Numbered from the whole stretch's first letter, positions 35,965-61,091 are shown. The stretch: 63,337 nt of DNA, filler included, from Octopus bimaculoides (GCF_001194135.2; 5 parts of 3 records of this genome joined end to end with filler, not necessarily neighbours in it), one strand, 5' to 3'. Numbers and translations: made by a program. The notes: generated by a model from the sequence alone, not told the origin.

Positions 35965-38721
35965 TTTACTGTTACTGTGTCTTGTAATGGCATTTCCAAT
36001 GTCTGCACTGTAATTTCTTTCTCCACCTCTTCTTCACCTGTTGTATATGTCTGTTCAGTCTTTATCACCATTGGTACCTGATCTTCAGATGTGACTTTCT
36101 TAGAGTCAATTGATACAACCATTTCCACAGGAATATCACTAATTTTCTCTGGAGAAATCTCAGTCTTCCGTTCCTCAGTGCTTGTAGTTATAATTGAAGT
36201 AACTTTAGCAGTTTCAACTTTCTCTGGTATTACTGACTCAGATATATCTGTAGGTTGAATTTCAGAAACAGGTTTCACTTCTTCTTCTGGTTGTTTCTCC
36301 TTCATTACAGTTGTTGAAATTGTTGTAATATCAGTAATTTGTGGTTTCTTCTCTTTAATTTCCATTTCTTTAGCTTCAATCTGAATTGTACTTTCCGGCA
36401 CAATATCAAATGTAGAAATTTCTGGAATAACTTCAGTTTCTTCTTTGCTAATGATAATTTCTCTCTTATCGGTAGTGATTGGTTCTTTTTGTATAGAAAT
36501 TATCTCAGGTAGTTGAGGTACCACTTGAATTTCAATTTCACTGACTGGTTTCTCAGGTTTACCAATATCAATGGATATAACTTCTGTTTTCTCAACAGGT
36601 TTAGCACCAATGTCAAGTTGGATAGACATTTCTTCTTTAGTTTCTGGTTTAATATCAACCTCTGTCTTTTCAATTTCAGTGACAACTTTCTCTGGTTTAC
36701 CAATTTCAATGGTTGTAACTTCTGTTTTCTCAACAGGATTAGCACCAATGTCAAGTTGGATAGACATTTCCTCTTTAGTTTCTGGTTTAATATCAACCTC
36801 TGTCTTTTCGATTTTAGTGACAACTTTCTCTGGTTTACCAATTTCAATGGTTGTAACNNNNNNNNNNNNNNNNNNNNNNNNNNNNNNNNNNNNNNNNNNN
36901 NNNNNNNNNNNNNNNNNNNNNNNNNNNNNNNNNNNNNNNNNNNNNNNNNNNNNNNNNNNNNNNNNNNNNNNNNNNNNNNNNNNNNNNNNNNNNNNNNNNN
37001 NNNNNNNNNNNNNNNNNNNNNNNNNNNNNNNNNNNNNNNNNNNNNNNNNNNNNNNNNNNNNNNNNNNNNNNNNNNNNNNNNNNNNNNNNNNNNNNNNNNN
37101 NNNNNNNNNNNNNNNNNNNNNNNNNNNNNNNNNNNNNNNNNNNNNNNNNNNNNNNNNNNNNNNNNNNNNNNNNNNNNNNNNNNNNNNNNNNNNNNNNNNN
37201 NNNNNNNNNNNNNNNNNNNNNNNNNNNNNNNNNNNNNNNNNNNNNNNNNNNNNNNNNNNNNNNNNNNNNNNNNNNNNNNNNNNNNNNNNNNNNNNNNNNN
37301 NNNNNNNNNNNNNNNNNNNNNNNNNNNNNNNNNNNNNNNNNNNNNNNNNNNNNNNNNNNNNNNNNNNNNNNNNNNNNNNNNNNNNNNNNNNNNNNNNNNN
37401 NNNNNNNNNNNNNNNNNNNNNNNNNNNNNNNNNNNNNNNNNNNNNNNNNNNNNATCAAAGAATTCTTCTTCAGAAAGTTCTTCTTCAGCTGTACTCACAA
37501 CACTCACTGATGGAGCACTTATAATGGTCATTTCAGAGATACCTTTCACTTCTTTAGTCACAGGAATGATTTCACTTTCCTTGCTGATTTCAACAACCTT
37601 ATCGGTTACATCTTCAACAGGAGCTTCTTCAATAGCAGATGCTTTTGTAGAACTCACAGAAATTTGAATACCAGTTTCTTCCACTGGTTTTACTGTTACT
37701 GTGTCTTGTAATGGCATTTCCAATGTCTGCACTGTAATTTCTTTCTCCACCTCTTCTTCACCTGTGGTATATGCCTGTTCAGTCTTTATTACCATTGGTA
37801 CCTGATCTTCAGATGTGACTTTCTTAGAGTCAATCGATACTACCATTTCCACAGGAATATCACTAATTTTCTCTGGAGAAATCTCAGTCTTCCGTTCCTC
37901 AGTGCTTGTAGTTATAATTGAGGTAACTTTAGCAGTTTCAACTTTCTCTGGTATAATCGTCTGAGACACATCTGTAAGTTGAATTTCAGAAACAGGTTTC
38001 ACTTCTTCTTCTGGCTGTTTTGCCTTCATTACAGCAGTTGAAATTGATGTAATATCAGTAATTTGTGGTTTCTTCTCTTTAATTTCCATCTCTTTAGCTT
38101 CAATCTGAATTGTACTTTCTGGCACAATATCGAATGTAGAAATTTCCGGAATAACTTCAGTTTCTTCTTTGCTAATGATAATTTCTCTGGTATCAATAGT
38201 GATTGGTTGTTTTTCTATAGAAATAAACTCGGGCACCTGAGGTGCCACTTGCATTTCAATTTCAGTGACTGGTTTCTCAGGTTTTCCAATGTCAATCGAT
38301 ATAACTTCTGTTTTCTCGACAGATTTAGCACCAATGTCAAGTTGGATAGAGACTTCCTCTTTAGTTTCTGGTTTAATATCAACCTCCGTCTTTTCTTTAA
38401 TTTCATCCTTCTTGTCTATTTTTTTATCAATAATTGTCTCAAATGACGTTGGTCCAGTTGTTATTTGTTCTCTGTGAGAAATATATACCTCATCAGATTT
38501 GGTTATTTCTTTTTCAATATCTTTTGCTTCATCAGTTTTAGCTTTTACTTCATCTGAAGTTATTTGTACATTTATATCCATTTTAATGCTTTCAGGTTTT
38601 TCTAAAGATGGTAAACTTTCTTTTATTTCTGCAACTTCCTGCAGTGCCATTTCTGGTATTTCTTTAGTCATTTCTTCTTCTTCGTCTGTCTTTGTTATTT
38701 CTCTAACAACTGGCATATCAC
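35965..38721 (-). CDS. giant repetitive exon C of an E/K/T/V/I-rich (titin-like low-complexity) protein; 3' end lost in the join
   Basis: Long open frames either side of a gap; acceptor ttgatttacattag|GT GAT ATG CCA (phase 1) at 38721; the same modules occur in exons A and B. Confidence 0.8.
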
Positions 38722-40140
38722 CTAATGTAAATCAAATAAGTTTTTAAAAAATACATTCTCATATAATAATCAGAGTTTTATCTGATGTTTATTTATCTTC
38801 CTGTGATTTAAAGAAATATGAAATTTTGTTTACATCTAAATGAGAGAAATAAAGAACAAATATTAATTTCATGTAATATAGAGAATATCACCTTGAAAGA
38901 GGAGTAATGTATGATGGTTAATAGTATCTAGACTTATTACAGGTTGAACTTGTGCTATACTTTGATGTAAATGAGGATCTTTTTTAATATAGGGCATATT
39001 TTTAGAATTTCATCTGAATGTTGTATGGATGAAACTTTATGTAATTTCATTGATCTTTGAATGACCATCTGGAATCACATTTAAAATATTTCTTGTATAC
39101 ATCAGTATAGGGTGTTAATAATAGCTGTTTCCAACATTTTTTATTCTTACTTGCTCAGAGATTTCTGCTGTCTTAATACTATGTATTTGTCTTTTTTTCT
39201 TAACTTCAGATTCTAAGCTGTATGTAACTTTGGTCTGATATGATATAAACTGTTGTTATTTAATAATTTTTTACAATCGTTGAATAGAATTCATGTAGAA
39301 AACGATGGATGAACATAAGACAAGAATTTTATTGTTGTGCATGTCTTTGCAAGTGATGCATAAATCAATTCATCAACTACAAATATTTTCTAAAGATATG
39401 GAAAACAATCTTTGAATAAATTTCCATCAAAAGAAAATTATTGGTTGTAGTTTTGTTGTTCTCCAAAATCAATCTTCTTGCCACATACTTTTTTTATCTT
39501 CTTTTCAACCTGATTTTCCATACATCAGTGTGTGTGTGTGTGTGTATTGTGTGAGTGTGTGCATGTGTGTGCATTGTGTATGTATACATGGGTCTGCACA
39601 TAAGCACCTATTCTTTTATACAGAATGCATATTATATTTTTCCCATGAATTCATGCAAGAATGCAATAAAAGCATTCAGGAATGATGGGTTTTTTTCTCA
39701 CTTGAACAAGTAAAGTGTAAAAACAATGCTCAGTTATCTAATTGGTATAATTACCAAAGGTTTCTTACTTGCATTATTTTTCTTAAAACATCTTTAAATA
39801 TATCTCAGTATGATTGATATAAAAGTTAATGTCCAAGGGTTAAAAATATAAAACTGTATGTTTTAAATTAGGTATTGATTTTAAATTAATTTTTATAGCC
39901 TTGTTTAAAAAACAGAAATATGTTCTCCAACTTTCAGAAATATTCTTCTTTAATTTCTTCTGACAAAATGTATGAAAACTGATCAATATATTTAATAAAT
40001 AAGTAACAAAAAAGATAACTGAATATCTGAAATTAAAATTGATTAGCAGGATAAAACAATTTGGAGGTAAAATTAAATTTCCTATCTGCCTATCATAAAA
40101 CATTTTAATTCTTGAAAATAGAAATTATAGGATTACATAC

Positions 40141-40390
40141 CTGGGGTGTAGAAAATTAAATCATAACTTTGGTAAATCATTCATAGTTTTTAAATTTAAT
40201 ACCTACTTCCTCTGTTGAATAACTGTAAACTTTTATGCTCTTCTCACATAAGGATATATATTACCATAAATTTTAACCATAACTGATATACAAGTTATGG
40301 TTCTGTAGTATTGTAAATGGTACATGTGGATTATAGAGATTGAATTTGGTATCTGGTAACAGAAATTCAATTCAAAAACAGGAAACTTAC
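40141..40390 (-). promoter_or_regulatory. candidate recursive splice site (tttatttcag|gtaag at 40391/40390) with a downstream 5' splice site (ccag|gtatgt at 40141/40140)
   Basis: Polypyrimidine tract plus AG directly followed by GTAAG; both junctions are conserved in the paralogous intron. Confidence 0.55.
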
Positions 40391-40831
40391 CTGAAATAAA
40401 CAAAAAGAGTTAAGTGAAAGAGACACATTATTAAAAGGAAACATATATATATTACATCTAACAAATTATTTAACAGTACAAGACATAAACTATAACAGTA
40501 AATTCATTTTAAATATCTTAAAAATATAAATTGCAACACAAAAAAGACAGATTATAAATATCTAAGAGAGGAGTAAATAACTGTTTAGTAAAAAAAAAAA
40601 ATATTTATAATGACACAAAATGTAACAGTGACAGTAAAAATTAATCATTAAATATTCTGCAATCAATTGTGACATGAAGAATTTACCAAAACATAAGTTG
40701 GCTGTTATATATATATATATATNNNNNNNNNNNNNNNNNNNNNNNNNNNNNNNNNNNNNNNNNNNNNNNNNNNNNNNNNNNNNNNNNNNNNNNNNNNNNN
40801 NNNNNNNNNNNNNNNNNNNNNNNNNNNNTAT

Positions 40832-41120
40832 TATAAAAAATAAATAAAACAAATATATATCCTACAATTTGTTTCGATTCATATCCGTTAGTGAATTTAT
40901 GTATATGGATCTCATCAGGTAATATTTGTCTAAAAAAATAGACAAAAATTTCATGCAAGGACTGTTAAATCATAAAATAGATTATTTTATGAAATTGCAT
41001 GAAATTTTTGTCCATTTTTTAGACAAATATTACCTGATGAGATCCATATACATAAATTCACTAACGGATATGAATCGAAACAAATTGTAGGATATATATT
41101 TGTTTTATATATTTTTTATA
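40832..41120. repeat. near-perfect ~127-bp inverted repeat with a 36-bp spacer
   Basis: Arms 40832-40958 and 40995-41120 differ at about 3 positions; the spacer contains its own tcataaaata/tattttatga hairpin. Confidence 0.95.
41027..41096 (+). ncRNA. type I hammerhead ribozyme, family 3, intact core (mirror copy on the minus strand at about 40855-40926)
   Basis: ctgatga at 41034-41040, helix II gatccata/tatgaatc, gaaa at 41077-41080, helix III aca-aat-tgt and a GUA triplet. Helix I is weak (atattac/ggatat with a bulge). Confidence 0.6.
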
Positions 41121-41754
41121 TTATATCATATTATATTATATGTTTTCATAGTATAATTATATTATATTATAATGTTGATAAATTTATAATATGTCAATTG
41201 TATTTCTCTATTTCTTTTAATATTTATTTTTTGAAATAATACCATTTTAAGTTCTGATTTTTTTCTCTACTTCTCTACTATATTGTGGTATTTAACTGAA
41301 GAACCAGAGAAAATTGCATGTTTTCCATCCCTTTGAAAGAAATTGTCTCTTCTTTGGATTGTATAATTATATATATATACAATTTTATCAGAGATAGAGG
41401 ATGAAAGAATTCCATGTTGCCACTATTGCAGATTTTTTTCTGCTGCAATAGTGGCAACATAGAATTCTTTCATCCTCTAGCTCTGATAAAATATTTGAGA
41501 AATATTATATTAATATATCTTGTCTGTTGAAAGTCCATATTTATTGCAACTGAAGATGGCACAATATTTAAATTGATTTAATGCTTGCATTGTTAGGTTA
41601 AATGGACCCACCTGAAATAGTCGTATTGCATTAATACCTGACATCCTGTTACTTATTTAATTTTATTTACCTTACTTCAAGCTATGCAGATAATACCAGA
41701 CTGACTTGGTACCTCAACTTAAGTATCCAATTCAACTGAATCTTAATTATTTCT

Positions 41755-41851
<97 letters not shown>

Positions 41852-44619
41852 TATTTATTAAAGATTTATTTGTTCTTTTAAATATTATACACTGAGAAAC
41901 TATATAAATTCATTTGTTAAGATTAATTAAATATACCTTCTATAAAAAAAATTCTGGGAAAAGTTTTAAATTTCATTAACTAAATCAATTACCAAATTCA
42001 TATGGTTTTTTTTTTTTTCCATCTAAATAAGAATGGAGTTTCCGATTTACCTAGAGATTGAAATCAAAGAATGCAATCTTGGCAAAAACTAAGAATCTAA
42101 AGAAGTGACAGTAACTTGGAAATCAGGAGTAGAAATACAATTATTGTCAAGTCCATCATATAATAAATAACTAGGCTCTTTTCAATGTTTAAAAATTATT
42201 TGTAAACATTCAATATTCAAACATCATGTGTATTAAGATAATTACATTAAAAGAACAAGGTAGGTTTGTTTTTTAATATAAACAAAGATTGCATTGCAGG
42301 TTGTAAAAGACAGTTTTCTACAATTACAAGCAATAATAAATATAAGAAAATAATTTTCATTTTAATTAAAAAAACAAACAAGTAACAATACAGTATACAT
42401 TAATTAATACATATGACAATTCTGTTGACCAAGATAAACGATTATACATAAATCAATTGTTCTATATAGCAACTACATGTGCAGATACAACAAAACATTA
42501 GCACCTGACATTTTTAACAAATTTACAGTTTCACTAATGAAGCTGTTAAATCTATATTGCAGAGCAAAATACAATTAACATTTTTTTTAAATATTCTATT
42601 CCATTATTTTACTTTCCCTTTTTATCTTTCCAATAACTCAAAACTTTCAATGGCAAATGAAAATTATAACAAATAACCAGAATCATCAATATAATAAGTA
42701 ACCCCAAAATTGATGACAGATATACTATCATCATAGCTTGTGATTTCAAAGTTTTAATGGTGAAGCTTATGTATTGAAAGGACTAGGAAAAAATGGATAG
42801 CAAAAGGAGGTATCAGAAATCTAGGTCAGAAATCAGATGTCAATTTTATTTAACCAGCAAGAATCTGAGAGTAGAATAATTCTCAGTGAGAAAAAGAGCT
42901 GTTCACTATTCTTAATTGCAAGACAATATTATTATATGAACTTGATTGGTATTAGAAGTATGTTGAGAACAACAGTCTTGCAATTTTCCAATTTTGGGAG
43001 TAGAAATGTCGCCTTAAAAGTATCATTACAAAAAGTTGCTAGATAAGGTAGTCCAGGAAGCTGTTAGGTATAATGACTAGCAAGACCTTTAAAAAGTGAT
43101 ACAAAAACTAAAGGGATGTATTGCATAACTGGGGGTATGAACTTGTGGATTTACAATATATTGCAGTTAATGCAAGATATGATTAGCTTAGAAAACTTGT
43201 AATTTTGGTTTGAAGGCGGAAATGATCAGAAAATAATATGAGTAGCTTTTGAAAGAAAACAAACATTTCACTATGGATTTGTAAACTTGGGACCCAGCTT
43301 TAACAACCTCCCATGCTTTAATTACTTGCATGGACAGATGTGTATCAGTAGATCAATAATCTGTGAGAGAAAAATAAAACCATGTACAAAGTTCTTGAAA
43401 TCAATGTTGAGATCATCAGCAAGTTCGGTGAAGAATTCTGTGTGAAGATATTTACTTGATCTCTATCCAGGACCTCTTAGTATAATTCTTTGTAGTTAGT
43501 TGTAATTACTAAAATAATAATGATACTTTTCCCATTTGAATATCATTGCAAATTTTTATCAGAAACAATTTGGCTGTCATCCTATAATCTTTTAAGAAAG
43601 TGGAACTAGCTACAGTTCAAAATATTGTGATAATCATAATGGCAAAAATACTAACAAGTAACTAAGAACAGAAAATTCCTGGACAACAAAGAAAGTAGTT
43701 TTGCTCAATTTGTAAGATAAGTGTAAATTAAAACTGAATTCTATGTTCTACCAAAAGGAATGACCAGACAAAAGGGATGGAGAAATCTCGAGAAAACTAA
43801 CAAGTTGGGTGTGCAAAACATCACAAAAATAAAACGAAATTCAACAAAATTTTCTAAAATAAACACTATATGAAACCTTTCACAAGAAATATAGCACAAG
43901 TTTAAATTTCAGAAATTAGATTTTACAATAGTAATTTGTCTCATACATTATTTGTCATTATTTCTATCTATGTTTATCTTTATAAGTTTCTCTGATTTTG
44001 CCTTCAAAATACAATAGTTAATTTTAAAACTAGATTGAGAAAATATATTTTTCTAAAGTCTATTCTGAGTAAAAGGAATACTAAGAAAACATCTGTTTAT
44101 AAGGACTCTTTGATAATAAGAAATAATAGGACTTTTACTTCACCTTTTTGAGTTATCTTTTTACACATACTGTTGTATATTCATACACACACACACATTT
44201 AATTATGAATCACAACTTTACATAAACTATATAGAAAAAAAGTTAAAAAACTGGTGAAATATTTCCTCTTATAATCCCCATATTAAAAAGACAAAAGCTA
44301 TATTGTGTGTGAATTAATACAAGCTTCCATACTGCAAGTGTATAATTTTACATTTATGCAAAAATTGCAATTATTGTAGCCATGTTTTCATGCAAGTGAA
44401 ACCTTACACACTAACATGAAATAAAATATGATGCACAAATATTAGACCTATAAACAATCATATATGATAAAGAATTAGTTAGAAGTTACCAGTATTGATG
44501 AATGTATTCAATACTAAATATCTTCAAATATATTCTAAGAGGAAAAAAGCAGATTTAGAATATTTACATCGTAATAAAGTACAGAGATTTTTACAAAAAA
44601 AAAGTGAGAGATGATGATG

Positions 44620-44760
44620 GAAGAAGAAGAAGAAGAAGAAGAAGAAGAAGAAGAAAAGAAGAAGAAGAAGAAGAAGAAGAAGAAGAAGAAGAAGAAGAAG
44701 AAGAAGAAGAAGAAGAAGAAGAAGAAGAAGAAGAAGAAGAAAAGGAGGAGGAGGAGGAGT
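44620..44760. repeat. (GAA)n/(GAG)n microsatellite
   Basis: Long AAG run; it accounts for the poly-E, poly-S and poly-L pseudo-ORFs. Confidence 0.97.
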
Positions 44761-45356
44761 TAATGAAAGAAAAAAATGAAAATGGCAGAAAGGGAAATGA
44801 CACAAAAAAGAAAGGTTGCAAAAATCAGTTTCAATACAAAAAGAAAACTTAGAGAAAGCATAGTAGAAAGGGGGAGAGACATGAAGAGAACAGAAAGAGA
44901 AAATGTATGATAAAAAATGAAGGCATTGAGAGGAGGGAGAGATACAAAGGACAAAGAGAGAAAGAAAGAAGAGACAGACAGAGAATGGAGAGAGAGCATG
45001 ATGGCGAAGAGTATCCAATCTTATATGACATAATATCATTTTAAATATGAAGGCAAAGCAACATGCATGACAATATAATATTAAGAAAGCATCTTCTGTT
45101 TAATAAAAACAGTGTTATACTCCTTAATTATCAGAAATTACAGAGACCTGACAAAACTATTGACAAATTATTGAGCTGAAAGAGACATAAAAACAAATAC
45201 ACTGGTTAAGTACATAAAAAGACATCTTAATACAAAACTGAAGCATGCTACCAAGGCATTGGTAAGCTACATATATATATATGCTTCTGTATAGTCAAGC
45301 AGTAGCAGCAAGTGTAGAAGCATAAGTGAAATCCTGGATAATACTCCACAAAATAC

Positions 45357-48300
45357 CTATGTCTTCAACAACTTCTTTCAACGAGTGAAGGATTTCAGGA
45401 CCAGGAAGGTTTTTTATATCTCCACTAGAAATATCTGGTACATGTGCAATTCTGGGAAATTCAAATGGCATTTCTTCTTTGACTTGGGATATAATAACTT
45501 CTTCAGAAGCTTTCTCATCAATATCCTCTTCAGGCAGCAAATATTCCACTTCTGGAACTTTTTCTTTCCTTTCAGAGGATGGTGTAGGTGCAATATAAGT
45601 AATTTCCGAATCCATAACCTTCATCGCCAACAAGGGAGAGGTTTCAGTTTCATTGCCAACTTCACCCACACTATCACTTTCATCTACAGCAAGAGCTTCT
45701 TCGGTAGGAGATAATTTAGTAGAACTCAAAGGAATTTGTATAAGAGCAGATTCCGCTGATTTTGGAGTTATGGAATCTTGTAATGGCATTTCCAGTGCTT
45801 GTACTGTAGTTTCTTTCTCCGATTCTTCACCTGTTGTATATGTCTCTTCAGTCTTTATAACCATTGGTACCTGATCTTCAGATGTGACTTTCTTAGAGTC
45901 AATTGATACTAACATTTCAACAGGAATATCACTAATTTTATCTGGAGAAATCTCAGTCTTCCGTTCCTCAGTGCTTGTTGTTATAATTGAGGTAACTTCA
46001 GCAGTTTCAACTTTCTCTGATGTAACTGACTCAGATATATCTATAGGTTGAATTTCAGAAACAGGTTTCACTTCTTCTTCTGGTTGTTTCTCCTTCATTA
46101 CAGCAGTAGAAATTGTTGTAATATCAGAAGTTTGTGGTTTCATCTCTTTAACTTTTACTTCTTTAGTTTCAATCTCAATTGTACTTTCTGGCAAGAAATC
46201 AGTTGTAGCAATTTCTGGAATAACTTCAGTTTCTTCATTGCTAATAATAATTTCCTTCTTATCAACAGTGATTGGTTCTGTTTCGATAGAGATAACCCTG
46301 GCTACTTCACGTGCAAACTGCATCTCAATTTCACTTACTGGTTTCTCAGGTTTACCAATATTAATAGATAAAACATCTATTTTCTCAACAGGTTTATCAG
46401 AAATCTCAAGTTGCATAGCCACTTCCTCTTTACTTTCAGGTTTAAGATCAACCTCTGTCTTTTCAATTTCAGTGACTACTTTTTCTGGTTTACCAATTTC
46501 AATTGCAGTAACCTCTGTTTTCTCAACAGCTTTATCAGAAATCTCAAGCTGGATAGCGACTTCCTCTTTAGTTTCACGTTTAATATCAACCTCTGTCTTT
46601 TCAATTTCAGTCACTACTTTTTCTGGTTTACTAATTTCAATTGTAGTAACCTCTGTTTTCTCCACAGGTTTATCAGAAATCTCAAGTTCGATAGCGACTT
46701 CCTCTTTAGTTTCATGTTTAATATCAACCTCTATTTTTTCAATTTCAGTCACTACTACTTCTGGTTTACCAGTTTCAATTGTAGTAACCTCTGTTTTCTC
46801 CACAGTTTTATCAGAAATCTCAAGTTCAATAGCGACTCCCTCTTTAGTTTCAGGAATAATATCAACCTCTGTCTTTTCAATTTCGGTGACTACTTTTTCT
46901 GGTTTACCAACTTCAATTGTAGTAACCTCTGTTATCTCAACAGGTTTATCAGAAATCTCAAGTTCAATAGCCACTTCCACTTTAGTTTCCGGTTTAATAT
47001 CAACTTCTGTCTTTTCGATTTCAGTGACTACTTTTTCTGGTTTACCAATTTCAATTGTAGTAACCTCAGTTTTCTCAACAGGTTTATCAGAAATCTCAAG
47101 TTGGATAGCGACTTCCTCTTTTGTTTCAGGTTTGATATCTACCTCTGTCTTTTCAATTTCAGTAAACACTTCTTCTGGTTTACCAATTTCAATTGTAGTA
47201 ACCTCTGTTTTCTCAACAGGTTNNNNNNNNNNNNNNNNNNNNNNNNNNNNNNNNNNNNNNNNNNNNNNNNNNNNNNNNNNNNNNNNNNNNNNNNNNNNNN
47301 NNNNNNNNNNNNNNNNNNNNNNTAGTAACCTCTGTTTTCTCCACAGGTTTATCAGAAATCTCAAGTTCGATATTGATTTCCTCTTTAGTTTCAGGTTTAA
47401 TATCCACCTCTGTCTTTTCAATTTCAGTGACTATTTTTTCTGATTTACCAACTTCAATGGTAGTAACCTCTGTTTTCTCAACAGGTTTATCAGAAATTTC
47501 AAGCTCGATAGCAACTTCCTCTTTAGTTTCAGGTTTAATATCAACCTCTATCTTTTCAATTTCAGTGACTACTTTTTCTGGTTTACCAATTTCAATTGTA
47601 GTAACCTCTGTTTTCTCCACAGTTTTATCAGAAATCTCAAGTTGGATGGCGACTTCCTCTTTAGTTTGATGTTTAATATCAACCTCTGTCTTTTCAATTT
47701 CAGTGACTACTGTTTCTGGTTTACCAATTTCAATTGTAGTAACCTCTGTTTTCTCAACAGGTTTATCAGAAATCTCAAGTTCGATAGCGACTTCCTCTTT
47801 AGTTTCAGGTTTAATATCAACCTCTGTCTTTTCAATTTCAGTCACTACTTTTTCTGGTTTACCAACTTCAATTGTAGTAACCTCTGTTTTCTCAACAGGT
47901 TTATCAGAAATCTCAAGTTCGATATCGATTTCCTCTTTAGTTTCAGGTTTAATATCAACCGCTGTCGTTTCAATTTCAGTGTGTACTTTTTCTGGCTTAC
48001 CAATTTCAATTGTAGTAACCTCTGTTTTCTCCACAGGTTTATCAGAGATCTGTATTTGGATAGCGACTTTCTCTTTAGTTTGAGGTATAATATCAACCTC
48101 TGTCTTTTCAATTTCAGTCACTACTTTTTCTGGTTTACCAATTTCAATTGAAGTAAGCTCTGTTTTATCCACAGGTTTATCAGAAATCTCAAGTTCGATA
48201 GCGACTTCTTCTTTAGTTTCAGGTATAATATCATCCTCTGTCTTTTCAATTTCAGTGTGTACTTTTTCTGGCTTACCAATTTCAATTGTAGTAACCTCTG

Positions 48301-51102
48301 TTTTCTCCACAGTTTTATCAGAAATCTGTAGTTGGAGAGCGACTTCCTCTTTAGTTTCAGGTTTAATATCAACCGCTGTCGTTTCAATTTCAGTGTGTAC
48401 TTTTTCTGGTTTACCAATTTCAATTGAAGTAAGCTCTGTTTTCTCCACANNNNNNNNNNTTTCTGGTTTACCAATTTCAATTGAAGTAAGCTCTGTTTTC
48501 TCCACAGGTTTATCAGAAATCTCAAGTTCGATAGCGACTTCCTCTTTAGTTTCAGGTTTAATATCCACCTTTGTCTTTTCAATTTCAGTGACTACTACTT
48601 CTGGTTTACCAATTTCAATTGTAGTAACCTCTGTTTTCTCCACAGTTTTATCAGAAATCTCAAGTTGGATAAAGACTTCCTCTTTAGTTTCAGGTTTAAT
48701 ATCAACCTCTGTCTTTTCAATTTCAGTGACTACTTTTTCTGGTTTACCAATTTCAATTGTAGTAACATCTGTTTTCTCCACAGGTTTATCAGAAATCTCA
48801 AGTTCGATAGTGACTTCCTCTTTAGTTTCAGCTTTAATATCAACCTCTGTCTTTTCAATTTCAGTCTCTACTACTTCTGGTTTACCAATTTCAATTGTAG
48901 TAACCTCTGTTTTCTCCACAATTTTATCAGAAATCTCAAGTTCGATAGCGACTTCCTTTTTAGTTTGAGGTTTAATATCAACCTCTGTCTTTTCAATTTC
49001 AGTGACTACTGTTTCTGGTTTACCAATTTCAATTGTAGTAACCTCTGTTTTCTCAATAGGTTTATCAGAAATCTCAAGTTCGATAGCGACTTCCTCTTTA
49101 GCTTCAGGTTTAATATCAACCTCTGTCTTTTCAATTTCAGTCACTACTGTTTCTGGTTTACCAATTTCAATGGTTGTAACTTCTGTTTTCACAACAGGTT
49201 TAGCACCAATGTCAAGCTGGATAGACATTTCCTCTTTAGTTTCTGGTTTAATTTCAACCTCTGTCTTTTCAATTTTAGTTACCACTTTTTCTGGTTTACC
49301 AATATCAATGGATATAACTTCTGTTTTCTCAACAGGTTTACCACCAATATCAAGTTGGATAGAGACTTCTTCTTTAGTTTCTGGTTTAATATCAACCTCT
49401 GTCTTTTCAATTTCAGTGACTACTTTTTCTGGTTTACCAACATCAACGGATATAACTTCTGTTTTCTCAACAGGTTTAGCACCAATGTCAAGTTGGATAG
49501 ACATTTCCTCTTTAGTTTCTGGTTTAATATCAACTTCGGTCTTCTCAACAGGTTCCTTTGAAACTACTTCTTCATGTACAATTTCAGAAGGAATTGTCTC
49601 TTGAACTGTAATCTTTTGCAGATCAGTGCTAACAACAGCTGCAGACATAGATATCTCCACATGTTCTTTCTCTATATCAGTTATATGTTCAATAGTGTCA
49701 ACTAACACATCTTCTGTTGTGCGAATCTTATCACATACACTAACTGATGTATCTTTTTCCTCATCAGAAACCTCTTTAGGTTCCACTTTCTTTTCTTCAG
49801 TTGATGGAATATCAAAGAATTGTTCTTCAGAAAGTTCTTCTTCAGCTGTACTCACAACACTTACTGATGGAGCACTTATAATGGTCATTTCAGAGATACC
49901 TTTCACTTCTTTACTCACAGGATTCATTTCACTTTCCTTGCTGATTTCAACAACTTTATCAGTTACATCTTCAACAGGAGCTTCTTCAATAGCAGATGCT
50001 TTTGTAGAACTCACAGAAATTTGAATACCAGTTTCTTCCACTGGTTTTACAGTTACTATGTCTTGTAATGGCATTTCCAATGTCTGCACTGTTATTTCTT
50101 TCTGCACCTCTTCTTCACCTGTTGTATATGTCTGTTCAGTCTTTATCACCATTGGTACCTGATCTTCAGGCGTGACTTTCTTTGAGTCAATTGATACTAC
50201 CATTTCCACAGGAATATCACTAATTTTCTCTGGAGAAATCTCAGTCTTCCGTTCCTCAGTGCTTGTAGTTATAATTGAGGTAACTTTAGCAGTTTCAACT
50301 TTCTCTGGTATTACCGTCTCAGATACATATGTAAGTTGAATTTCAGAAACAGGTTTCACGTCTTCTTCTGGTTGTTTCTCCTTCATTACAGCAGTCGAAA
50401 TTGCTGTAATATCAGTAATTTGTGGTTTCTTCTCTTTAATTTCCATTTCTTTAGCATCAATCTGAATTGTACCTTCTGGCACAATATCAAATGCAGAAAT
50501 TTCCGCAATAACCTCAGTTTCTTCTTTGCTAATGATAATTTCCTTCTTATCGGTAGTTATCTGTTCTTTTTCTATAGAAATAACCTCGAGTACTTGAGGT
50601 GCCACTTGCATTTCAATTTCACTGACTGGTTTCTCAGGTTTACCAATATCAAAAGATATAACTGCTATTTTCTCAACAGGTTTAGCACCAGTATCAAGTT
50701 GGATAGATACTTCTTGGTTACTTTCGGGTTTAATGCAATATTCTTTTGAATCTTTAATTTCAATTTGTATAGTTTTATCACTTATACTCTCAATTTTTGT
50801 TGGTCCTATTGTTATTTGTTCCCTTTGTGAAATAGAAACATCATCTGATTTTCGTATTTCTTTTTCAAAATCTTTTGCCTCTACAGTATGTTCCACTATA
50901 TTCATGTCATATGTACCTGGTTCTGCTACAAATGAAGCTCTTTGTACAGTGATATCCATTTCAATGCCTATAGTTGTTTGTAATGTGGGTGAATCATCTT
51001 TTACTTCCTTAGTTTCCTCTAAAACCTTCTCAGATATTTCTTTAATATTTTCTTCACTGTATTCTTCTGTTTCTTTTATTTCTGTAGGAACTGGCAAATC
51101 AC
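45357..51102 (-). CDS. giant (~5.7 kb) repetitive exon B, including about 22 copies of a 46-aa repeat
   Basis: ORFs of 1294 and 708 aa are broken only by N gaps. Acceptor ttgatttatattag|GT GAT TTG CCA at 51102; donor GAA GAC ATA G|gtattt at 45357; 138-bp periodicity. Confidence 0.85.
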
Positions 51103-52247
51103 CTAATATAAATCAAACAATTTTAAAAAATACTTTCTCATATAAAAGGAATACATTTTGTTTTGTCTCCATGTTTATATGTCTCCTTGATCAATGAAAA
51201 AAATACTTATAATATCATCTTATATATATATATATATATATATATATNNNNNNNNNNNNNNNNNNNNNNNNNNNNNNNNNNNNNNNNNNNNNNNNNNNNN
51301 NNNNNNNNNNNNNNNNNNNNNNNNNNNNNNNNNNNNNNNNNNNNNNNNNNNNNNNNNNNNNNNNNNNNNNNNNNNNNNNNNNNNNNNNNNNNNNNNNNNN
51401 NNNNNNNNNNNNNNNNNNNNNNNNNNNNNNNNNNNNNNNNNNNNNNNNNNNNNNNNNNNNNNNNNNNNNNNNNNNNNNNNNNNNNNNNNNNNNNNNNNNN
51501 NNNNNNNNNNNNNNNNNNNNNNNNNNNNNNNNNNNNNNNNNNNNNNNNNNNNNNNNNNNNNNNNNNNNNNNNNNNNNNNNNNNNNNNNNNNNNNNNNNNN
51601 NNNNNNNNNNNNNNNNNNNNNNNNNNNNNNNNNNNNNNNNNNNNNNNNNNNNNNNNNNNNNNNNNNNNNNNNNNNNNNNNNNNNNNNNNNNNNNNNNNNN
51701 NNNNNNNNNNNNNNNNNNNNNNNNNNNNNNNNNNNNNNNNNNNNNNNNNNNNNNNNNNNNNNNNNNNNNNNNNNNNNNNNNNNNNNNNNNNNNNNNNNNN
51801 NNNNNNNNNNNNNNNNNNNNNNNNNNNNNNNNNNNNNNNNNNNNNNNNNNNNNNNNNNNNNNNNNNNNNNNNNNNNNNNNNNNNNNNNNNNNNNNNNNNN
51901 NNNNNNNNNNNNNNNNNNNNNNNNNNNNNNNNNNNNNNNNNNNNNNNNNNNNNNNNNNNNNNNNNNNNNNNNNNNNNNNNNNNNNNNNNNNNNNNNNNNN
52001 NNNNNNNNNNNNNNNNNNNNNNNNNNNNNNNNNNNNNNNNNNNNNNNNNNNNNNNNNNNNNNNNNNNNNNNNNNNNNNNNNNNNNNNNNNNNNNNNNNNN
52101 NNNNNNNNNNNNNNNNNNNNNNNNNNNNNNNNNNNNNNNNNNNNNNNNNNNNNNNNNNNNNNNNNNNNNNNNNNNNNNNNNNNNNNNNNNNNNNNNNNNN
52201 NNNNNNNNNNNNNNNNNNNNNNNNNNNNNNNNNNNNNNNNNNNNNNN

Positions 52248-52288
<41 letters not shown>

Positions 52289-52299
52289 TATACACATAT

Positions 52300-52625
52300 A
52301 TATGACAGTTGCATCCTCGTTACATGAGAAAAACTAATACCTCGTTCAGAGATTTAACATTTATTGCCAAGAAGATTTACTGAAATGATTCATGATTGTT
52401 GCCATGTGATGCCTTTATATGACTTTTAAGCCCAGCCAAGCTCTTACAAATCTTATTACATACTAGACAACTGTGCTGGCTGGCAGGAGAAACAGGTGCC
52501 ACCATATGCACTTTCTTAACATGTCTTTTTAGACCTCCAACTGAGAGGCACACCCTTCCACATTTTACATATTTTCTGTTATGAATTTTAATAGCCACAT
52601 CATTGTTTATCATGGGTCGATTTCT
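52300..52625 (-). mobile_element. probable RTE-type LINE 3' end with two C2H2-like knuckles
   Basis: CGRVCLSVGGLKRHVKKVH and CLVCNKICKSLAGLKSHIKASH without TGEKP linkers, then a short UTR ending at a (TA)n run. Confidence 0.5.
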
Positions 52626-52930
52626 ATGAGAATATTTAAAGCATTACTTAGAAAAAAAAAACAAACAAACAAAATGTTTTTTAAATTTCAGAAATATTAT
52701 TGTTGAATTTCTTCTGAGGAAAAAAAAAATGAAACAAATCAAACTATCAACAGTAAAATGCAATGTGATTGTCTATCTGAAAATAAGACAGGTTGAATTT
52801 AAATGAGGATAAAATAAAAATATGAACATAAAAAGTAATCATAAATCAAGAATGCTTTAGTTTTCTACCAAACCTGCTTATAATAAATAAAATCTTAATT
52901 CTTGAAAATAGAAATTATGAGTTTACATAC

Positions 52931-53218
52931 CTGAGATGCAGAAAATTAAATCATAACTTTGGTAAACATTTTAATTAGACTTTAAGATATACTTTCCCTG
53001 TTGAATATTTCTCACTTTTTCCCACATATCTACATATTTTGAGTACAGATACATCATCATCATCGTTTAACGTCCGCTTTCCATGCTAGCATGGGTTGGA
53101 CATTTTGAGTACAGATACCATAATGGGAATATGTAACAATACTGTAGTATAACTATTTTAAGTAGATTCAATTTGGTATTTGATAAAAGATGTTCCATAA
53201 AAGAAGTTGATATCTTAC
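52931..53218 (-). promoter_or_regulatory. paralogous candidate recursive splice site (tttatttcag|gtaag at 53219/53218) with a downstream 5' splice site (ctcag|gtatgt at 52931/52930)
   Basis: Same architecture as 40141-40390. Confidence 0.55.
53053..53101 (-). mobile_element. 49-bp 5'-truncated family E retro-insertion with 17-bp target-site duplication
   Basis: attttgagtacagatac at 53036-53052 and 53102-53118. Confidence 0.9.
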
Positions 53219-54954
53219 CTGAAATAAACAAAAAAAAAAAACAAGTGAGACATTTGTTCAAAAAGAAGATATGAATATATATATTTACAGATATGCATGT
53301 ATGCATGTATGTATGTATGTATGTAGGTTGGTAGGTAGTTAGGTATAATTAATCAACATTACAAGCCATAAACTATAATAATAAACATCTTAAAATAAAG
53401 TTGCTATGAAAAAAGAAGGATTAATATTTAAAAATAAAAGATAAAGAAATTTTTAATATAGTCATTTATTATAGTGGCATGAAATAAGAAAATATTTGCA
53501 TAAAAGTTAAATAATATTCTGCAATCAAATGCAACATACACAATTTGCTCAAATATTAGGTATCGTGTATATAACATGTCCACTGAAAATTGTATTTCTG
53601 CTTTTAATTATTGTGTATTGAGAAGTAATATGAATTTAGCTGTTGAAAAGAGTTAGATATATCTTCTAAATATTAAAAAAAACAAAAAACTGAACTTTCA
53701 ACAGCGAAAACAACTACCAATGAATTTTATCATTTTAACTAAGGGACAGGAGTATAAAATACAATTGTTTTGAACTTCCCACAATTGCAAACAACTCCTT
53801 ACTTTTGAACATTTAAATATCATTTGTTAATAGTATTTAATGTAGAAAATCATAATAAAGAATTAGAATTGTTCTTAAATCTAAAACAAATTTAGCGTTG
53901 AAAGTTATAAAGCACATAGATATCTACAATTACAAGAAGCAAGTATAATTATATGAAAATGATTTTCATATGAAAATAAAACTAAACAGCATTAATTGAT
54001 TAGCTGTAACTTTTCTTTTTAGCAAAGTAATCACGTATAAATAAGTACTAAATATATTCTCTCAACTCCAATTATATATGAGATATAGCAATGCATTAGC
54101 ATTTGATATCTATTTAACAAATATACAGTGTGCTACTGATGGAGTTGTTATGATAGTAGTAAATGTTGTTTAGCCACAGGTCAGCTTTAATGTAGCAGAC
54201 TTCTGACCAAAGACCTTTCGGCCATGATCATGTTGTCTTTTACTTGTTTACAAGCAACCTATTATCCAGTATGTACCTTTCTAAGACAATGGGGTATGAA
54301 AGAATTTGGCTGCTTTTACCAGGTCATACAACCATATAACTACTCCTTCATTAGCTTAAATACATTGTTGAACAAAGCTGAATGCAAATTTTCTTAAAAT
54401 ATTCTGTTTTATTATTTTACTTTCTCATTTCTCTTGTTAGCTACTCAATTATATTTGAAAATTTCAACCAACTATTTTGGAACTATTTTGGGCATAAGGT
54501 GCTGTCTAGAATTATCAATATACAAAATCTTCTGGAGAATGATGGCAATGATATTGCCATTATTCTCTTAAGTTATATAGAGAAATACTATGAATACATT
54601 TGTGCTCAAAGAGAGTATGTACATGAAACAATAAATGAAGTGGTATGAAGGCTTCTATAAGTTCTGTGGTACAAAGTTATTGTGTTGATATAACAAACTT
54701 CATTGAACTTCAATGAACTACCTACCACTGTGACAAGTGTAACCACAACATTGATTAGTTAGGGGCTTATGAAGCCAGTTTGTGTATGAAGAACTTAAGG
54801 AAACAAATGACACAGGAGAAGAGAGTGAACAGACTTTACTAATAGATGAGACTTTCAATTAGTATGATAAAGAAGGAAAGACTAAAGAGCTATAAGAGTA
54901 AAAATCTATAAGACTAACAGTTTAGGGGGAACAAAACCAACTTATAATACAGAT

Positions 54955-58597: not shown

Positions 58598-61091
58598 CTA
58601 TGTCTTCAACACCTTCTTTCAATGGTTCAGGTATGTCGGGACCAGGATTGCTCAATTTAAGCTCAGTAACTGATGATTCTTTCTCTTTAATTTCCAGATC
58701 TTTGACTTCAACAGGGACTGTAATTTCTGGCTTGATATCGAATGTAGACATTTCTGGAGTAAGTTCGATTTCTTCCTTGCTAATGATAATTTCCTTCTCA
58801 TGAGTGGTTATCTCTTCTTTTTCTATACAAATAACCTCAGCAACTTGAGGTGCCACTTGCATTTCAATTTCACTGACTGGTTTCTCGGGTTTACCAATAT
58901 CAAAAGATATAACTTCTGTTTTCTCAACAGGTTTCTCTCCAACGTCAAGTTGAATAGAGACTGCCTCTTTAGTTTCAGGTTTAATGTCAACCTCTGTCTT
59001 TTCAATTTTAGTTACCACTTTTTCTGGTTTACCAATATCAATGGATATAACTTCTGTTTTCTCAACAGGTTTAGCACCAATGTCAAGTTGGATAGACATT
59101 TCCTCTTTAGTTTCTGGTTTAATGTCAACTTCTGTCTTCTCAACAGGTTCCTTCGAAACTACTTCTTCATGTACAATTTCAGAAGGAATTGTCTCTTGAA
59201 TTGTAATCTTTTGCAGGTCAGTGCTAACAACAGCTACAGACATAGGTATCTCCACATGTTCTTTCTCTATATCAGCTATATGTTCAATAGTGTCAACTAA
59301 CACATCTTCTGCTGTGCGAATCTCATCACGTACACTAACTGATGTATCTTTTTCCTCATCAGAAACCTCTTTGGGTTCCACTTTCTTTTCTTCAGTTGAT
59401 GGAATATCAAAGAATTCTTCTTCAGAAAGTTCTTCTTCAGCTGTACTCACAACACTCACTGATGGAGCACTTATAATGGTCATTTCAGAGATACCTTTCA
59501 CTTCTTTACTCACAGGATTCATTTCACTTTCCTTGCTGATTTCAACAACCTTATCAGTTACATCTTCAACAGGAGCTTCTTCAATAGCAGATGCTTTTGT
59601 AGAACTCACAGAAATTTGAATACCAGTTTCTTCCNNNNNNNNNNNNNNNNNNNNNNNNNNNNNNNNNNNNNNNNNNNNNNNNNNNNNNNNNNNNNNNNNN
59701 NNNNNNNNNNNNNNNNNNNNNNNNNNNNNNNNNNNNNNNNNNNNNNNNNNNNNNNNNNNNNNNNNNNNNNNNNNNNNNNNNNNNNNNNNNNNNNNNNNNN
59801 NNNNNNNNNNNNNNNNNNNNNNNNNNNNNNNNNNNNNNNNNNNNNNNNNNNNNNNNNNNNNNNNNNNNNNNNNNNNNNNNNNNNNNNNNNNNNNNNNNNN
59901 NNNNNNNNNNNNNNNNNNNNNNNNNNNNNNNNNNNNNNNNNNNNNNNNNNNNNNNNNNNNNNNNNNNNNNNNNNNNNNNNNNNNNNNNNNNNNNNNNNNN
60001 NNNNNNNNNNNNNNNNNNNNNNNNNNNNNNNNNNNNNNNNNNNNNNNNNNNNNNNNNNNNNNNNNNNNNNNNNNNNNNNNNNNNNNNNNNNNNNNNNNNN
60101 NNNNNNNNNNNNNNNNNNNNNNNNNNNNNNNNNNNNNNNNNNNNNNNNNNNNNNNNNNNNNNNNNNNNNNNNNNNNNNNNNNNNNNNNNNNNNNNNNNNN
60201 NNNNNNNNNNNNNNNNNNNNNNNNNNNNNNNNNNNNNNNNNNNNNNNNNNNNNNNNNNNNNNNNNNNNNNNNNNNNNNNNNNNNNNNNNNNNNNNNNNNN
60301 NNNNNNNNNNNNNNNNNNNNNNNNNNNNNNNNNNNNNNNNNNNNNNNNNNNNNNNNNNNNNNNNNNNNNNNNNNNNNNNNNNNNNNNNNNNNNNNNNNNN
60401 NNNNNNNNNNNNNNNNNNNNNNNNNNNNNNNNNNNNNNNNNNNNNNNNNNNNNNNNNNNNNNNNNNNNNNNNNNNNNNNNNNNNNNNNNNNNNNNNNNNN
60501 NNNNNNNNNNNNNNNNNNNNNNNNNNNNNNNNNNNNNNNNNNNCCTCTGTCTTTTCAATTTCAGTGACAACTTTCTCTGGTTTACCAATTTCAATGGTTG
60601 TAACTTCTGTTTTCTCAACAGGTTTAGCACCAATGTCAAGTTGGATAGACATTTCCTCTTTAGTTTCTGGTTTAATATCAACTTCGGTCTTCACAACAGG
60701 TTCCTTTGAAACTACTTCTTCGTGTACAATTTCAGAAGGAATTGTCTCTTGAATTGTAATCTTTTGCAGGTCAGTGCTAACAACAGCTGCAGACATAGGT
60801 ATCTCCACATGTTCTTTCTCTATATCAGTTATATGTTCAATAGTGTCAACTAACACATCTTCTGTAGTGCGAATCTCATCACGTACACTAACTGATGTGT
60901 CTTTTTCCTCATCAGAAACCTCTTTAGGTTCCACTTTCTTTTCTTCAGTTGATGGAATATCAAAGAATTCTTCTTCAGAAAGTTCTTCTTCAGCTGTACT
61001 CACAACACTCACTGATGGAGCACTTATAATGGTCATTTCAGAGATACCTTTCACTTCTTTACTCACAGGATTCATTTCACTTTCCTTGCTG
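58598..61091 (-). CDS. giant repetitive exon A; 5' end lost in the join
   Basis: Open frames either side of a gap with the same modules; donor GAA GAC ATA G|gtatct at 58598. Confidence 0.8.

What the first reader, a model, noticed from the sequence alone, without database searches (positions are those of the whole stretch)
40105..53240. Duplicated recursive-splice-like architecture: AG|GTAAG followed by a cryptic exon
Seen: both paralogous introns have tgtttatttcag|GTAAG (40391/40390 and 53219/53218), and 250 or 288 nt downstream a cag|GTATGT site in a 72-bp block with only 6 mismatches (40105-40176 vs 52895-52966), while the sequence between them has diverged and shares no ORF. The second site also has a pyrimidine tract and AG|GT, and the giant exons themselves start ag|GTGAT. 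Known: recursive splice sites in flies and vertebrates are 3' splice sites that regenerate a 5' splice site and are defined by a downstream cryptic exon. Inference: this locus uses ratchet points, perhaps to step across or skip multi-kb exons. I know of no description of this in molluscs.
Basis: partly seen in the sequence, partly recalled or inferred. Interest (0 to 1): 0.75.

Follow-up and report, generated by a model that had tools for sequence, protein, structure and literature searches.

The report
Likely recursive splice site before giant exon
In a cephalopod gene built of tandem multi-kilobase exons, a conserved intronic AG|GTAAGT site is used as a splice acceptor in RNA from two species and leaves RNAs that look like recursive-splicing intermediates, but the second splicing step was not shown and the paralogous copy could not be tested.

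Summary
The sequence observation is correct. On the minus strand, AGGTAAG occurs only at 53219 and 40391, and AGGTATG only at 52931 and 40141. These are paralogous positions in two diverged introns. The 72-bp block has 6 mismatches.

RNA contigs show that the copy-2 site (40391|40390) is a real 3' splice site.
- In three runs of the source species it is joined to a coding exon "X" that lies outside the piece, at least 20.7 kb upstream, skipping giant exons A and B.
- In a related species it is joined to a giant-exon donor (...GACATAG).
- These RNAs then run colinear with the genome, unspliced, for 1.67 kb into giant exon C.
- No RNA covers the sequence just upstream of the site.
- No contig uses the downstream CAG|GTATGT as donor or acceptor.
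- Mature X->C and A->C junctions are 5-7 times more abundant, and the 250-nt segment is not seen in mature junctions.

This fits a ratchet point with a cryptic RS-exon. The second step, resplicing from the regenerated AAG|GTAAGT, cannot be shown from contigs. A dead-end alternative-acceptor, retained-intron isoform remains a serious rival. Use of copy 1 (53219) was not detected and could not be tested properly.

Verdict: partly supported. It is a good lead for the first recursive splice site in a mollusc.

The parts
58598..61091 (-). Giant exon A, cut by the piece's edge, with an assembly gap at 59635-60543. It ends in phase 1 at the donor ATAG|GTATCT (58598|58597).
   Evidence: ORFs and sequence. 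RNA contigs end at 58596, meaning the donor plus a shared GT. A-type donor joined to exon C.
53213..53245 (-). Copy-1 first site: a 90% pyrimidine tract followed by cag|GTAAGA (AG|GT at 53219|53218).
   Evidence: No junction contig was found. The stretch 53103-53232 is held in full only by one DNA run and one RNA run of the species.
52931..53218 (-). Copy-1 288-nt non-coding segment between the two sites. It contains a SINE fragment with a 17-nt target-site duplication (53052-53118).
   Evidence: RNA contigs of X15 cover 52845-53078 and cross 52931|52930 unspliced.
52874..52970 (-). Copy-1 conserved block around cag|GTATGT (52931|52930).
   Evidence: 87% identity over 98 nt to 40086-40181. 66/72 matches in the core. 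No Rfam match and no stable fold.
45357..51102 (-). Giant exon B. It is phase 1 at both ends, has a weak acceptor attag|GTGAT, and is rarely included in the RNA runs examined.
   Evidence: Contig depth 5.6 at its start. Branch depths 25 vs 330 after the exon A donor; that these two branches are the B-type and C-type partners is my inference. Gaps examined.
40385..40415 (-). Copy-2 first site: tract + cag|GTAAGT (AG|GT at 40391|40390). It is a used 3' splice site that regenerates AAG|GTAAGT or TAG|GTAAGT.
   Evidence: Contigs of X15, X26 and X27 carry 26 letters of exon X directly joined here, and the X25 contig starts exactly here. The X48 contig (another species) carries a giant-exon end joined here. 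There is no RNA cover upstream of 40392.
40141..40390 (-). Copy-2 250-nt cryptic (RS-exon-like) segment, with an in-frame stop at 40235-40233.
   Evidence: (ORF 40233..40403). It is not joined to exon C in any contig.
40086..40181 (-). Copy-2 conserved block around cag|GTATGT (40141|40140). RNA contigs read through it unspliced.
38722..40390 (-). The 1.67-kb segment still present in RNAs already spliced at 40391. It is the presumed second-step intron, running from the regenerated donor to the exon C acceptor.
   Evidence: Contig lengths of 1698 nt (X25) and 1209 nt (X27) from their mapped starts end at 38695. That is the exact position where the unspliced path must merge with the A->C path for k=31. 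A separate X15 contig covers 38801-39481.
35965..38721 (-). Giant exon C (cut by the piece's edge, with an assembly gap at 36858-37453), with a weak acceptor cattag|GTGAT.
   Evidence: Its acceptor is joined to exon X and to an A-type giant-exon end in all four runs.

Best explanation
The piece is part of a cephalopod gene on the minus strand. It is built of tandemly duplicated, phase-1 giant exons that encode a repetitive E/K/T/V-rich protein. The giant exons are used as alternative cassettes.

About 1.7 kb upstream of giant exon C sits a ratchet-point module. It has three parts: a strong 3' splice site fused to a 5' splice site (Y-tract-CAG|GTAAGT, 40391|40390), a 250-nt non-coding cryptic exon, and a conserved CAG|GTATGT donor.

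Shown: upstream donors are spliced to this AG. In the source species the donor belongs to exon X, which lies beyond the piece. In a related species it is a giant-exon donor. The step removes more than 20 kb, including the skipped giant exons. The resulting RNA still carries the 1.67 kb down to exon C. The 250-nt segment is absent from mature junctions.

Inferred: the regenerated AAG|GTAAGT donor is then spliced to exon C's weak acceptor, giving the same X->C (or A->C) junction as direct splicing would. The downstream CAG|GTATGT serves only to define the cryptic exon and is outcompeted. The paralogous module upstream of exon B (53219/52931) would work the same way when exon B is chosen.
For: 1. 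Junction. Contigs in X15, X26 and X27 join ...GAAACAACTGAAGCAGCTCCATCAGAAG to GTAAGTTTCC at 40390. That exon end is not in the window at up to 3 mismatches. In frame it reads ETTEAAPSE-G and continues correctly into exon C.

2. Second species. A 1702-nt RNA contig (X48, 97% identical) joins TCATTGAAAGAAGGTGTTGAAGACATAG to the same site.

3. Colinear retention down to exon C. The contigs end at 38695, the predicted merge point with the A->C path.

4. Coverage step. Depth is 0 upstream of 40392 and 14-22 downstream in four runs. Organisms B and F show the same boundary, whereas DNA of organism C runs straight through.

5. Mature junctions. Only X->C (depth 71/117/155) and A-type->C (57/120/215) enter exon C. 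No CCCCAG|GTGAT junction was seen.

6. Abundance. The intermediate is 5-10% of exon C depth. That is the same order as plain unspliced RNA at the exon A donor, which is 2-9%.

7. Site strength. The regenerated donor matches the consensus at 8/9 positions, against 6/9 for the native giant-exon donors. The site's tract is 80-90% pyrimidine, against 55% for the giant-exon acceptors. T occupies positions -5 and -6, a feature enriched at fly ratchet points.

8. Conservation. The motifs are unique in the piece and sit at paralogous positions. The block around the second donor is conserved above the intron background. The segment between the sites is unconstrained: it has no shared ORF and took a SINE insertion. 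Fly RS-exons are described the same way (PMC8605326).
Against: - The defining second step is not shown. It needs lariats or kinetics, and only assembled contigs were available.
- The ratio of X->40390 to X->C junctions is 14-19%, which is high for a transient intermediate if the libraries are poly(A)-selected. The library type is not on record.
- In the source species, no contig joins the giant-exon donor at 58598 to GTAAG, although A->C is as common as X->C.
- Copy 1 shows no junction contigs.
- The cryptic exon is 250-288 nt, against about 50 nt in flies. The second-step intron is only 1.67 kb.
- One search did not lay the long contigs over 38752-39500 in three runs, so colinearity there rests on contig lengths plus the X15 contig.
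- The related species are only about 3% diverged, so orthologue conservation says little.
Confidence: 0.5

Rival explanations
1. Alternative 3' splice site plus a retained or detained intron. The strong AG at 40391 is an alternative acceptor that extends exon C by 1.67 kb on its 5' side. The regenerated GTAAGT is not respliced. The product carries a premature stop (40235-40233), so it is either an unproductive, possibly regulatory, isoform or splicing noise. X->C and A->C arise only by direct splicing.
For: The RNAs are fairly abundant, at 14-19% of the X->C junction depth, and were assembled in every run examined. They run uninterrupted into exon C. No evidence of the second step exists. The exon junction complex is known to repress regenerated donors after splicing (PMC6224609, abstract seen).
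Against: A useless or harmful cryptic acceptor would not be expected to keep a perfect AG|GTAAG, a strong tract and a conserved downstream donor block in both paralogues while the rest of the intron decayed. Its level equals that of ordinary unspliced pre-mRNA in the same libraries. The abrupt onset of coverage at the site is what a ratchet point gives.
Confidence: 0.3
2. The 250/288-nt segments are genuine alternative (poison or tissue-specific) cassette exons, or parts of alternative terminal exons. They would be spliced at CAG|GTATGT in tissues that were not sampled. The AG|GT juxtaposition would then be incidental.
For: The donor block is the best-conserved intronic element. One unitig (X26) breaks at 40139, two bases past the donor, as expected if a partner beginning GT exists. 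A further conserved acceptor, cag|AAGAAATT, lies downstream, and one contig starts exactly at it in copy 1 (52713).
Against: No contig in any of the runs laid here (six RNA runs, four species) is spliced at 40141 or 52931. Contigs in four runs of the source species and one of organism B (X48) read through the donor. No such junction enters exon C. The segments share no ORF, their lengths differ (250 vs 288 nt), and one took a SINE insertion.
Confidence: 0.12
3. Exon X lies in the 106-N assembly gap (40723-40828), only about 330-440 nt upstream. In that case X->40390 is an ordinary short intron and not a long-range step.
For: X is nowhere in the read sequence of the piece. The gap's content and true length are unknown.
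Against: The gap is flanked by (AT)n and AT-rich intron. The paralogous stretch upstream of the copy-1 site has nothing like X. In organism B the same acceptor is joined to a giant-exon donor, which lies at least 4.9 kb away. X is also joined directly to exon C, and apparently to other giant-exon starts, which suits an exon upstream of the whole array.
Confidence: 0.06

Closest known systems
Drosophila intronic ratchet points with cryptic RS-exons (Burnette 2005; Duff 2015, preprint 10.1101/006163; Joseph 2018 and 2021, PMC8605326)
   Same: Both have a juxtaposed strong acceptor and consensus donor (Y-tract, TT at -5/-6, CAG|GTAAGT). Both have junctions from an upstream donor to an unannotated intronic AG. 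Coverage restarts at the site. The cryptic exon is out of frame, poorly conserved and bounded by a conserved donor, and it is absent from mRNA. In both, the regenerated donor is at least as strong as the cryptic exon's donor.
   Different: Here the cryptic exon is 250-288 nt, against about 50 nt in flies. The last segment is only 1.67 kb, whereas the fly segments average about 18 kb. The intron that is stepped across contains skipped multi-kb coding exons. The module is duplicated along with each giant exon. The second step, lariats and a true sawtooth profile are not shown. The animal is a mollusc.
Vertebrate recursive splicing through RS-exons (Sibley 2015, from my own knowledge; Blazquez 2018, PMC6224609)
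   Same: The RS-exon is defined first and spliced to the preceding exon, which creates a recursive 5' splice site. The RS-exon contains a premature stop and is normally skipped. The cryptic exon is longer here than in flies.
   Different: Vertebrate cases lie in introns of about 100 kb or more in long neuronal genes, and RS-exon inclusion is tied to upstream cryptic events. Nothing of that kind could be tested here.
Ubx-type resplicing of expressed exons (Hatton 1998, as cited)
   Same: Cassette exons that begin with GT could regenerate a donor after being joined upstream, and then be removed. The giant exons here begin with GTGAT and are optional cassettes.
   Different: The donors regenerated at giant-exon starts (AAG|GTGATA, TAG|GTGATT) match the consensus at only 5-6 of 9 positions and lack G at +5. 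There is no evidence that they are used. The initial GT simply encodes Gly-Asp.
Decoy exons and detained introns (PMC7373989)
   Same: Both involve an exon-like, non-coding element inside an intron that stays in a fraction of transcripts.
   Different: Decoy exons act without being spliced. Here the element's acceptor is actually spliced, and only the downstream part of the intron is retained.

Membership tests
Recursive splice site (ratchet point with RS-exon) | A 3' and a 5' splice site juxtaposed: pyrimidine tract, then AG|GTRAGT | tested here: met
   The site reads tttttgtttatttcag|GTAAGT at 40391|40390 and ...cag|GTAAGA at 53219|53218. The tracts are 80-90% pyrimidine.
Recursive splice site (ratchet point with RS-exon) | RNA junctions from an upstream exon's 5' splice site to the intronic AG | tested here: met
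   Copy 2: exon X joined to 40390 in X15, X26 and X27, and a giant-exon end joined to 40390 in organism B. Copy 1: no junction found, and the region is haplotype-specific.
Recursive splice site (ratchet point with RS-exon) | The site lies inside a long intron that is removed in steps | tested here: met
   Exon X is absent from 40392-61091, so the first step spans at least 20.7 kb. One caveat is the 106-N gap at 40723-40828. The second segment is 1.67 kb.
Recursive splice site (ratchet point with RS-exon) | Sawtooth read density that restarts at the site | tested here: inconclusive
   Contig depth is 0 upstream and 14-22 downstream of 40392. Contig depth is flat within a contig, so no gradient can be seen. 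The raw-read runs barely express the gene.
Recursive splice site (ratchet point with RS-exon) | The regenerated 5' splice site is used (second-step lariat, or a precursor-product relation) | not testable with these tools
Recursive splice site (ratchet point with RS-exon) | The site and the cryptic exon are absent from mature mRNA | tested here: met
   Only X->C and A-type->C junctions enter exon C, and together they account for its depth. No junction from 40141 was seen. Rare forms below the contig threshold are not excluded.
Recursive splice site (ratchet point with RS-exon) | A downstream 5' splice site bounds a cryptic, non-coding RS-exon | tested here: met
   CAG|GTATGT matches the consensus at 8/9 positions and lies 250/288 nt downstream in a block with 66/72 identity. 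The segment has in-frame stops, no shared ORF and a SINE insertion. Its role in exon definition was not tested.
Recursive splice site (ratchet point with RS-exon) | The motif is conserved above the flanking intron | tested here: inconclusive
   Between paralogues, the 21/21 run at the first site is not significant alone, but the second block is (P 1e-5 to 3e-4). In orthologues, GTAAGT is unchanged with substitutions at +8 and +11, but overall identity is 97% on both sides of the site.
Ubx-type respliced expressed exon | After joining, the exon start regenerates a functional 5' splice site | tested here: not met
   AAG|GTGATA and TAG|GTGATT match at 5-6 of 9 positions, with no G at +5. There is no RNA evidence.
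Ordinary cassette or constitutive exon | Spliced at both ends and present in mRNA | tested here: not met
   The acceptor is used, but the donor at 40141 or 52931 is never seen spliced.

The most novel reading that the evidence does not exclude
Each giant exon of the tandem array carries its own ratchet module upstream: a strong acceptor fused to a strong donor, plus a conserved cryptic-exon donor. The spliceosome first lands on a module, discarding any number of multi-kb exons behind it. It then makes a short hop to the giant exon's intrinsically weak acceptor. On this reading, recursive sites are the selectors that decide which giant exons are included. That would be a use of recursive splicing for choosing among tandem giant exons, in a lophotrochozoan.
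Probability: 0.2. Interest if true: 0.7.

Novelty: new member of a known kind. Interest (0 to 1): 0.5.

Why it matters
Recursive splicing has been shown experimentally in flies and vertebrates. The paper library searched here holds no report of it for an octopus, another cephalopod or any mollusc. A validated case in a cephalopod would place ratchet points with cryptic RS-exons in the third great bilaterian branch, and would argue that the mechanism is ancestral. The context is also unusual: the intron stepped across contains optional multi-kb coding exons with weak acceptors, and the module was duplicated along with each exon. That makes a link between recursive splicing and exon choice directly testable. 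If the RNAs are instead dead-end retained-intron isoforms, the locus is an ordinary case of unproductive splicing.

Tried and rejected
- Raw-read RNA runs X24, X45 and X46. The gene is almost silent in them (depth 0-0.8 at the exon ends), and the hits were SINE and microsatellite noise.
- Protein homology across the A/B exon junction found nothing.
- Looking up an ORF of the retained segment in public contigs found nothing.
- Rfam on the whole piece gave only sub-threshold miRNA-model hits on microsatellites and nothing on the conserved blocks, so a snoRNA or other known RNA was rejected.
- Local RNA folding of both sites in both copies gave z-scores from -1.3 to +1.7, so a conserved hairpin was rejected.
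- Duplex search between the conserved islands, looking for docking/selector pairing as in mutually exclusive exon clusters, gave no pair strong in both copies. The first-site and second-site islands (I5/I6) scored z -5.8 in copy 1 but only -2.2 in copy 2, with long loose duplexes (one search timed out).
- Orthologue conservation as a test of constraint failed, because the related species are about 97% identical on both sides of the site.
- Copy-1 usage. There were no contigs over 53103-53292 even at 80% likeness, including in one DNA run. The stretch is held in full only by X1 (DNA) and X28 (RNA).

Full report
**Anatomy**

The usable piece (35965-61091) has 31% G+C and six assembly gaps. The gene is on the minus strand. 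Three very large open reading frames encode an E/K/T/V/I/P-rich protein with about 45-residue tandem repeats:
- Exon A runs from 61091 or beyond down to 58598.
- Exon B runs from 51102 to 45357.
- Exon C runs from 38721 to 35965 or beyond.

All three begin ag|GTGAT and end ...GACATAG|GTAT. They are therefore phase-1 symmetric cassettes. Pfam finds no domain, and a protein search across the A/B junction finds no relative, so the gene remains unnamed.

On the minus strand, tgtttatttcag|GTAAG is at 53219|53218 and 40391|40390. The sequence cag|GTATGT lies 288 and 250 nt downstream. AGGTAAG and AGGTATG occur on this strand only at these paralogous places. The 72-bp block has 6 mismatches.

The two introns (58597-51103 and 45356-38722) are paralogous, but only 8 islands still align, at 75-87% identity. 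A global alignment shows that the first site, the second site and a third conserved acceptor (cag|AAGAAATT, at 52714|52713 and 39960|39959) belong to one module of about 650 nt. Islands 1-4 average 70% identity. Against that background the block around the second site is significantly conserved. The perfect 21-nt run at the first site is not significant by itself.

The segment between the two sites has no common ORF and hits a stop in the incoming phase. In copy 1 it has taken a SINE fragment with a 17-nt target-site duplication.

**Gaps**

- The 10-N gap at 48450 is false, because its flanks overlap by 47 nt.
- The 100-N gap lies in exon B's repeats and nominally shifts the frame.
- The 1000-N and 106-N gaps are intronic and border (AT)n.

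None of the gaps touches the motifs.

**RNA evidence, copy 2**

Only Logan contigs were available for the runs that express the gene. The three raw-read RNA runs barely express it.

In X15, X26 and X27, a single contig joins 26 letters, GAAACAACTGAAGCAGCTCCATCAGA (plus an ambiguous AG), to GTAAGTTTCC at 40390. In X25 a 1698-nt contig starts exactly at 40392. No RNA contig covers 40400-40445.

The 26-mer is nowhere in the window. It is therefore the end of an exon "X" at least 20.7 kb upstream, unless X hides in the 106-N gap. In frame it reads ETTEAAPSE|G.

The contigs pass unspliced through cag|GTATGT (40141|40140) in X15, X25 and X27. X26 breaks at 40139 without any spliced partner being laid.

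Contig lengths place the ends of the X25 and X27 contigs at 38695. For k=31 this is exactly where an unspliced path must merge with the A->C junction path. The RNA is therefore colinear from 40390 into exon C. X15 adds a separate contig at 38801-39481. One search did not lay the long contigs over 38752-39500, and I cannot explain this. A filter triggered by the (CA)n at 39510-39600 is my guess.

**Mature junctions**

Exon C's acceptor is joined in all four runs to exon X (depth 71/117/155 in X15/X26/X27) and to an A-type giant-exon end, TTGAAAGAAGGTGTTGAAGACATAG (57/120/215). Together these account for the exon's depth (142/247/365). No contig joins ...CCCCAG to exon C.

Three conclusions follow. 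Exon B is skipped in most transcripts. The 250-nt segment is not a constitutive exon. The RNA spliced at 40391 is 14-19% of the X->C junction depth, or 5-10% of exon C depth.

At exon A's donor, contigs stop at 58596, which is the shared GT. Branches of depth 330 and 25 follow in X25, and I read these as the C-type and B-type starts. Plain unspliced RNA sits at 2-9% of exon depth. No contig leads from this donor to GTAAG.

**Other species**

An RNA contig from organism B (X48, 1702 nt, 97% identical) joins TCATTGAAAGAAGGTGTTGAAGACAT(AG), a giant-exon end, to the same 40390. It again runs about 1.7 kb onward. In organism F a contig starts at 40388 with nothing upstream. DNA of organism C runs colinear through the site. 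GTAAGT is unchanged in these species, and substitutions fall at +8 and +11. The species are too close for a test of constraint.

**Copy 1**

X15 has RNA over 52845-53078 that crosses 52931|52930 unspliced. X26 has a contig that starts exactly at 52713. Nothing covers 53103-53292 in X25, X26, X48 or even the DNA run X2, at 80% likeness. Only X1 (DNA) and X28 (RNA) hold all the words of 53103-53232. The stretch therefore seems haplotype-specific.

**Interpretation**

Several criteria used for fly ratchet points and the RS-exon model (PMC6224609) are met for copy 2:
- AG|GT with a strong tract, and TT at -5/-6.
- Junctions from upstream donors.
- Coverage that starts at the site.
- Absence from mRNA.
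- A poorly conserved, out-of-frame cryptic exon bounded by a conserved donor.

The regenerated donor (AAG|GTAAGT) matches the consensus at 8/9 positions, while the native giant-exon donors match at 6/9. The site's tract is 80-90% pyrimidine, against 55% at the giant-exon acceptors. A strong landing site followed by a short hop to a weak acceptor makes mechanistic sense.

The second step itself is missing from the evidence. An alternative-acceptor, retained-intron isoform carrying a premature stop explains the same contigs, so I give recursion 0.5 and that rival 0.3.

Some readings are not supported. The second site shows no use as a ratchet. Resplicing of giant exons from their GTGAT starts has no support (5-6 of 9 matches). 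A structured or known RNA in the conserved blocks is also ruled out.

**Novelty**

No paper in the searchable library links recursive splicing with octopus (0 hits). The hits with cephalopod (1) and mollusc (2) are incidental mentions. If validated, this would be a new member of a known kind, set in an unusual context of tandem giant exons.

Noticed in passing
58537-58597 and 45296-45356 (minus strand): If the giant-exon donors are not used, the reading frame continues for about 20 codons to a stop at the same aligned place in both copies (GILWILMQDLLCASALTAAA* and GILWSIIQDFTYASTLAATA*). The first 220 nt or so of both introns are 79% identical. A 1518-nt RNA contig (X25, depth 6.3) runs unspliced from 58625 to 57110. 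This could be an alternative read-through C-terminus and 3' end, or just pre-mRNA.
   Followed up: partly
52659-52717 and 39907-39963 (minus strand): There is a third conserved acceptor, cag|AAGAAATT. In the donors' phase it gives short tails, EEIQQ* (copy 1) and EEIKEEYF* (copy 2). One RNA contig (X26, depth 5) starts exactly at 52713. This may be an alternative terminal exon after each giant exon.
   Followed up: partly
38721 acceptor; exon B 45357-51102: Exon B is mostly skipped. An A-type giant-exon end is joined directly to exon C at a depth equal to the X->C junction. After the exon A donor the two branches have depths 330 and 25 in X25. The short unitig at the X->C junction suggests that exon X is also joined to other giant-exon starts that share GTGATATGCCAGTT.
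   Followed up: partly
53052-53118: A SINE fragment is flanked by a 17-nt direct repeat, GTATCTGTACTCAAAAT. Words from it reach contig depths of 1e5-1e6 in RNA runs. A longer element of high RNA depth lies at about 55100-55390.
   Followed up: partly
53103-53292: This stretch is held in full by only one DNA run (X1) and one RNA run (X28) of the species. It is absent from the contigs of another DNA run even at 80% likeness. It is probably a haplotype-specific or structurally polymorphic segment that includes the copy-1 first site.
   Followed up: partly
52380-52620 (minus strand): An ORF fragment present only in copy 1 contains two C2H2-zinc-finger-like motifs (…KCGRVCLSVGGLKRHVKKVH…CLVCNKICKSLAGLKSHIKASH…). 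It looks like a piece of a mobile element.
   Followed up: no
48450-48459: This 10-N gap is an unmerged overlap. The 47 nt on either side are identical, so the assembly duplicates 47 nt of exon B here.
   Followed up: yes
Only an X15 contig appeared. This is probably a filtering effect near the (CA)n at 39510-39600.
   Followed up: no
40899-41053 and 41395-41481 (plus strand): These are sub-threshold Rfam hits to the plant and insect miRNA precursor models MIR9563 and mir-9243 (56 and 48 bits, against gathering scores of 90 and 83). They lie in AT-rich intron and are most likely low-complexity hairpins.
   Followed up: no
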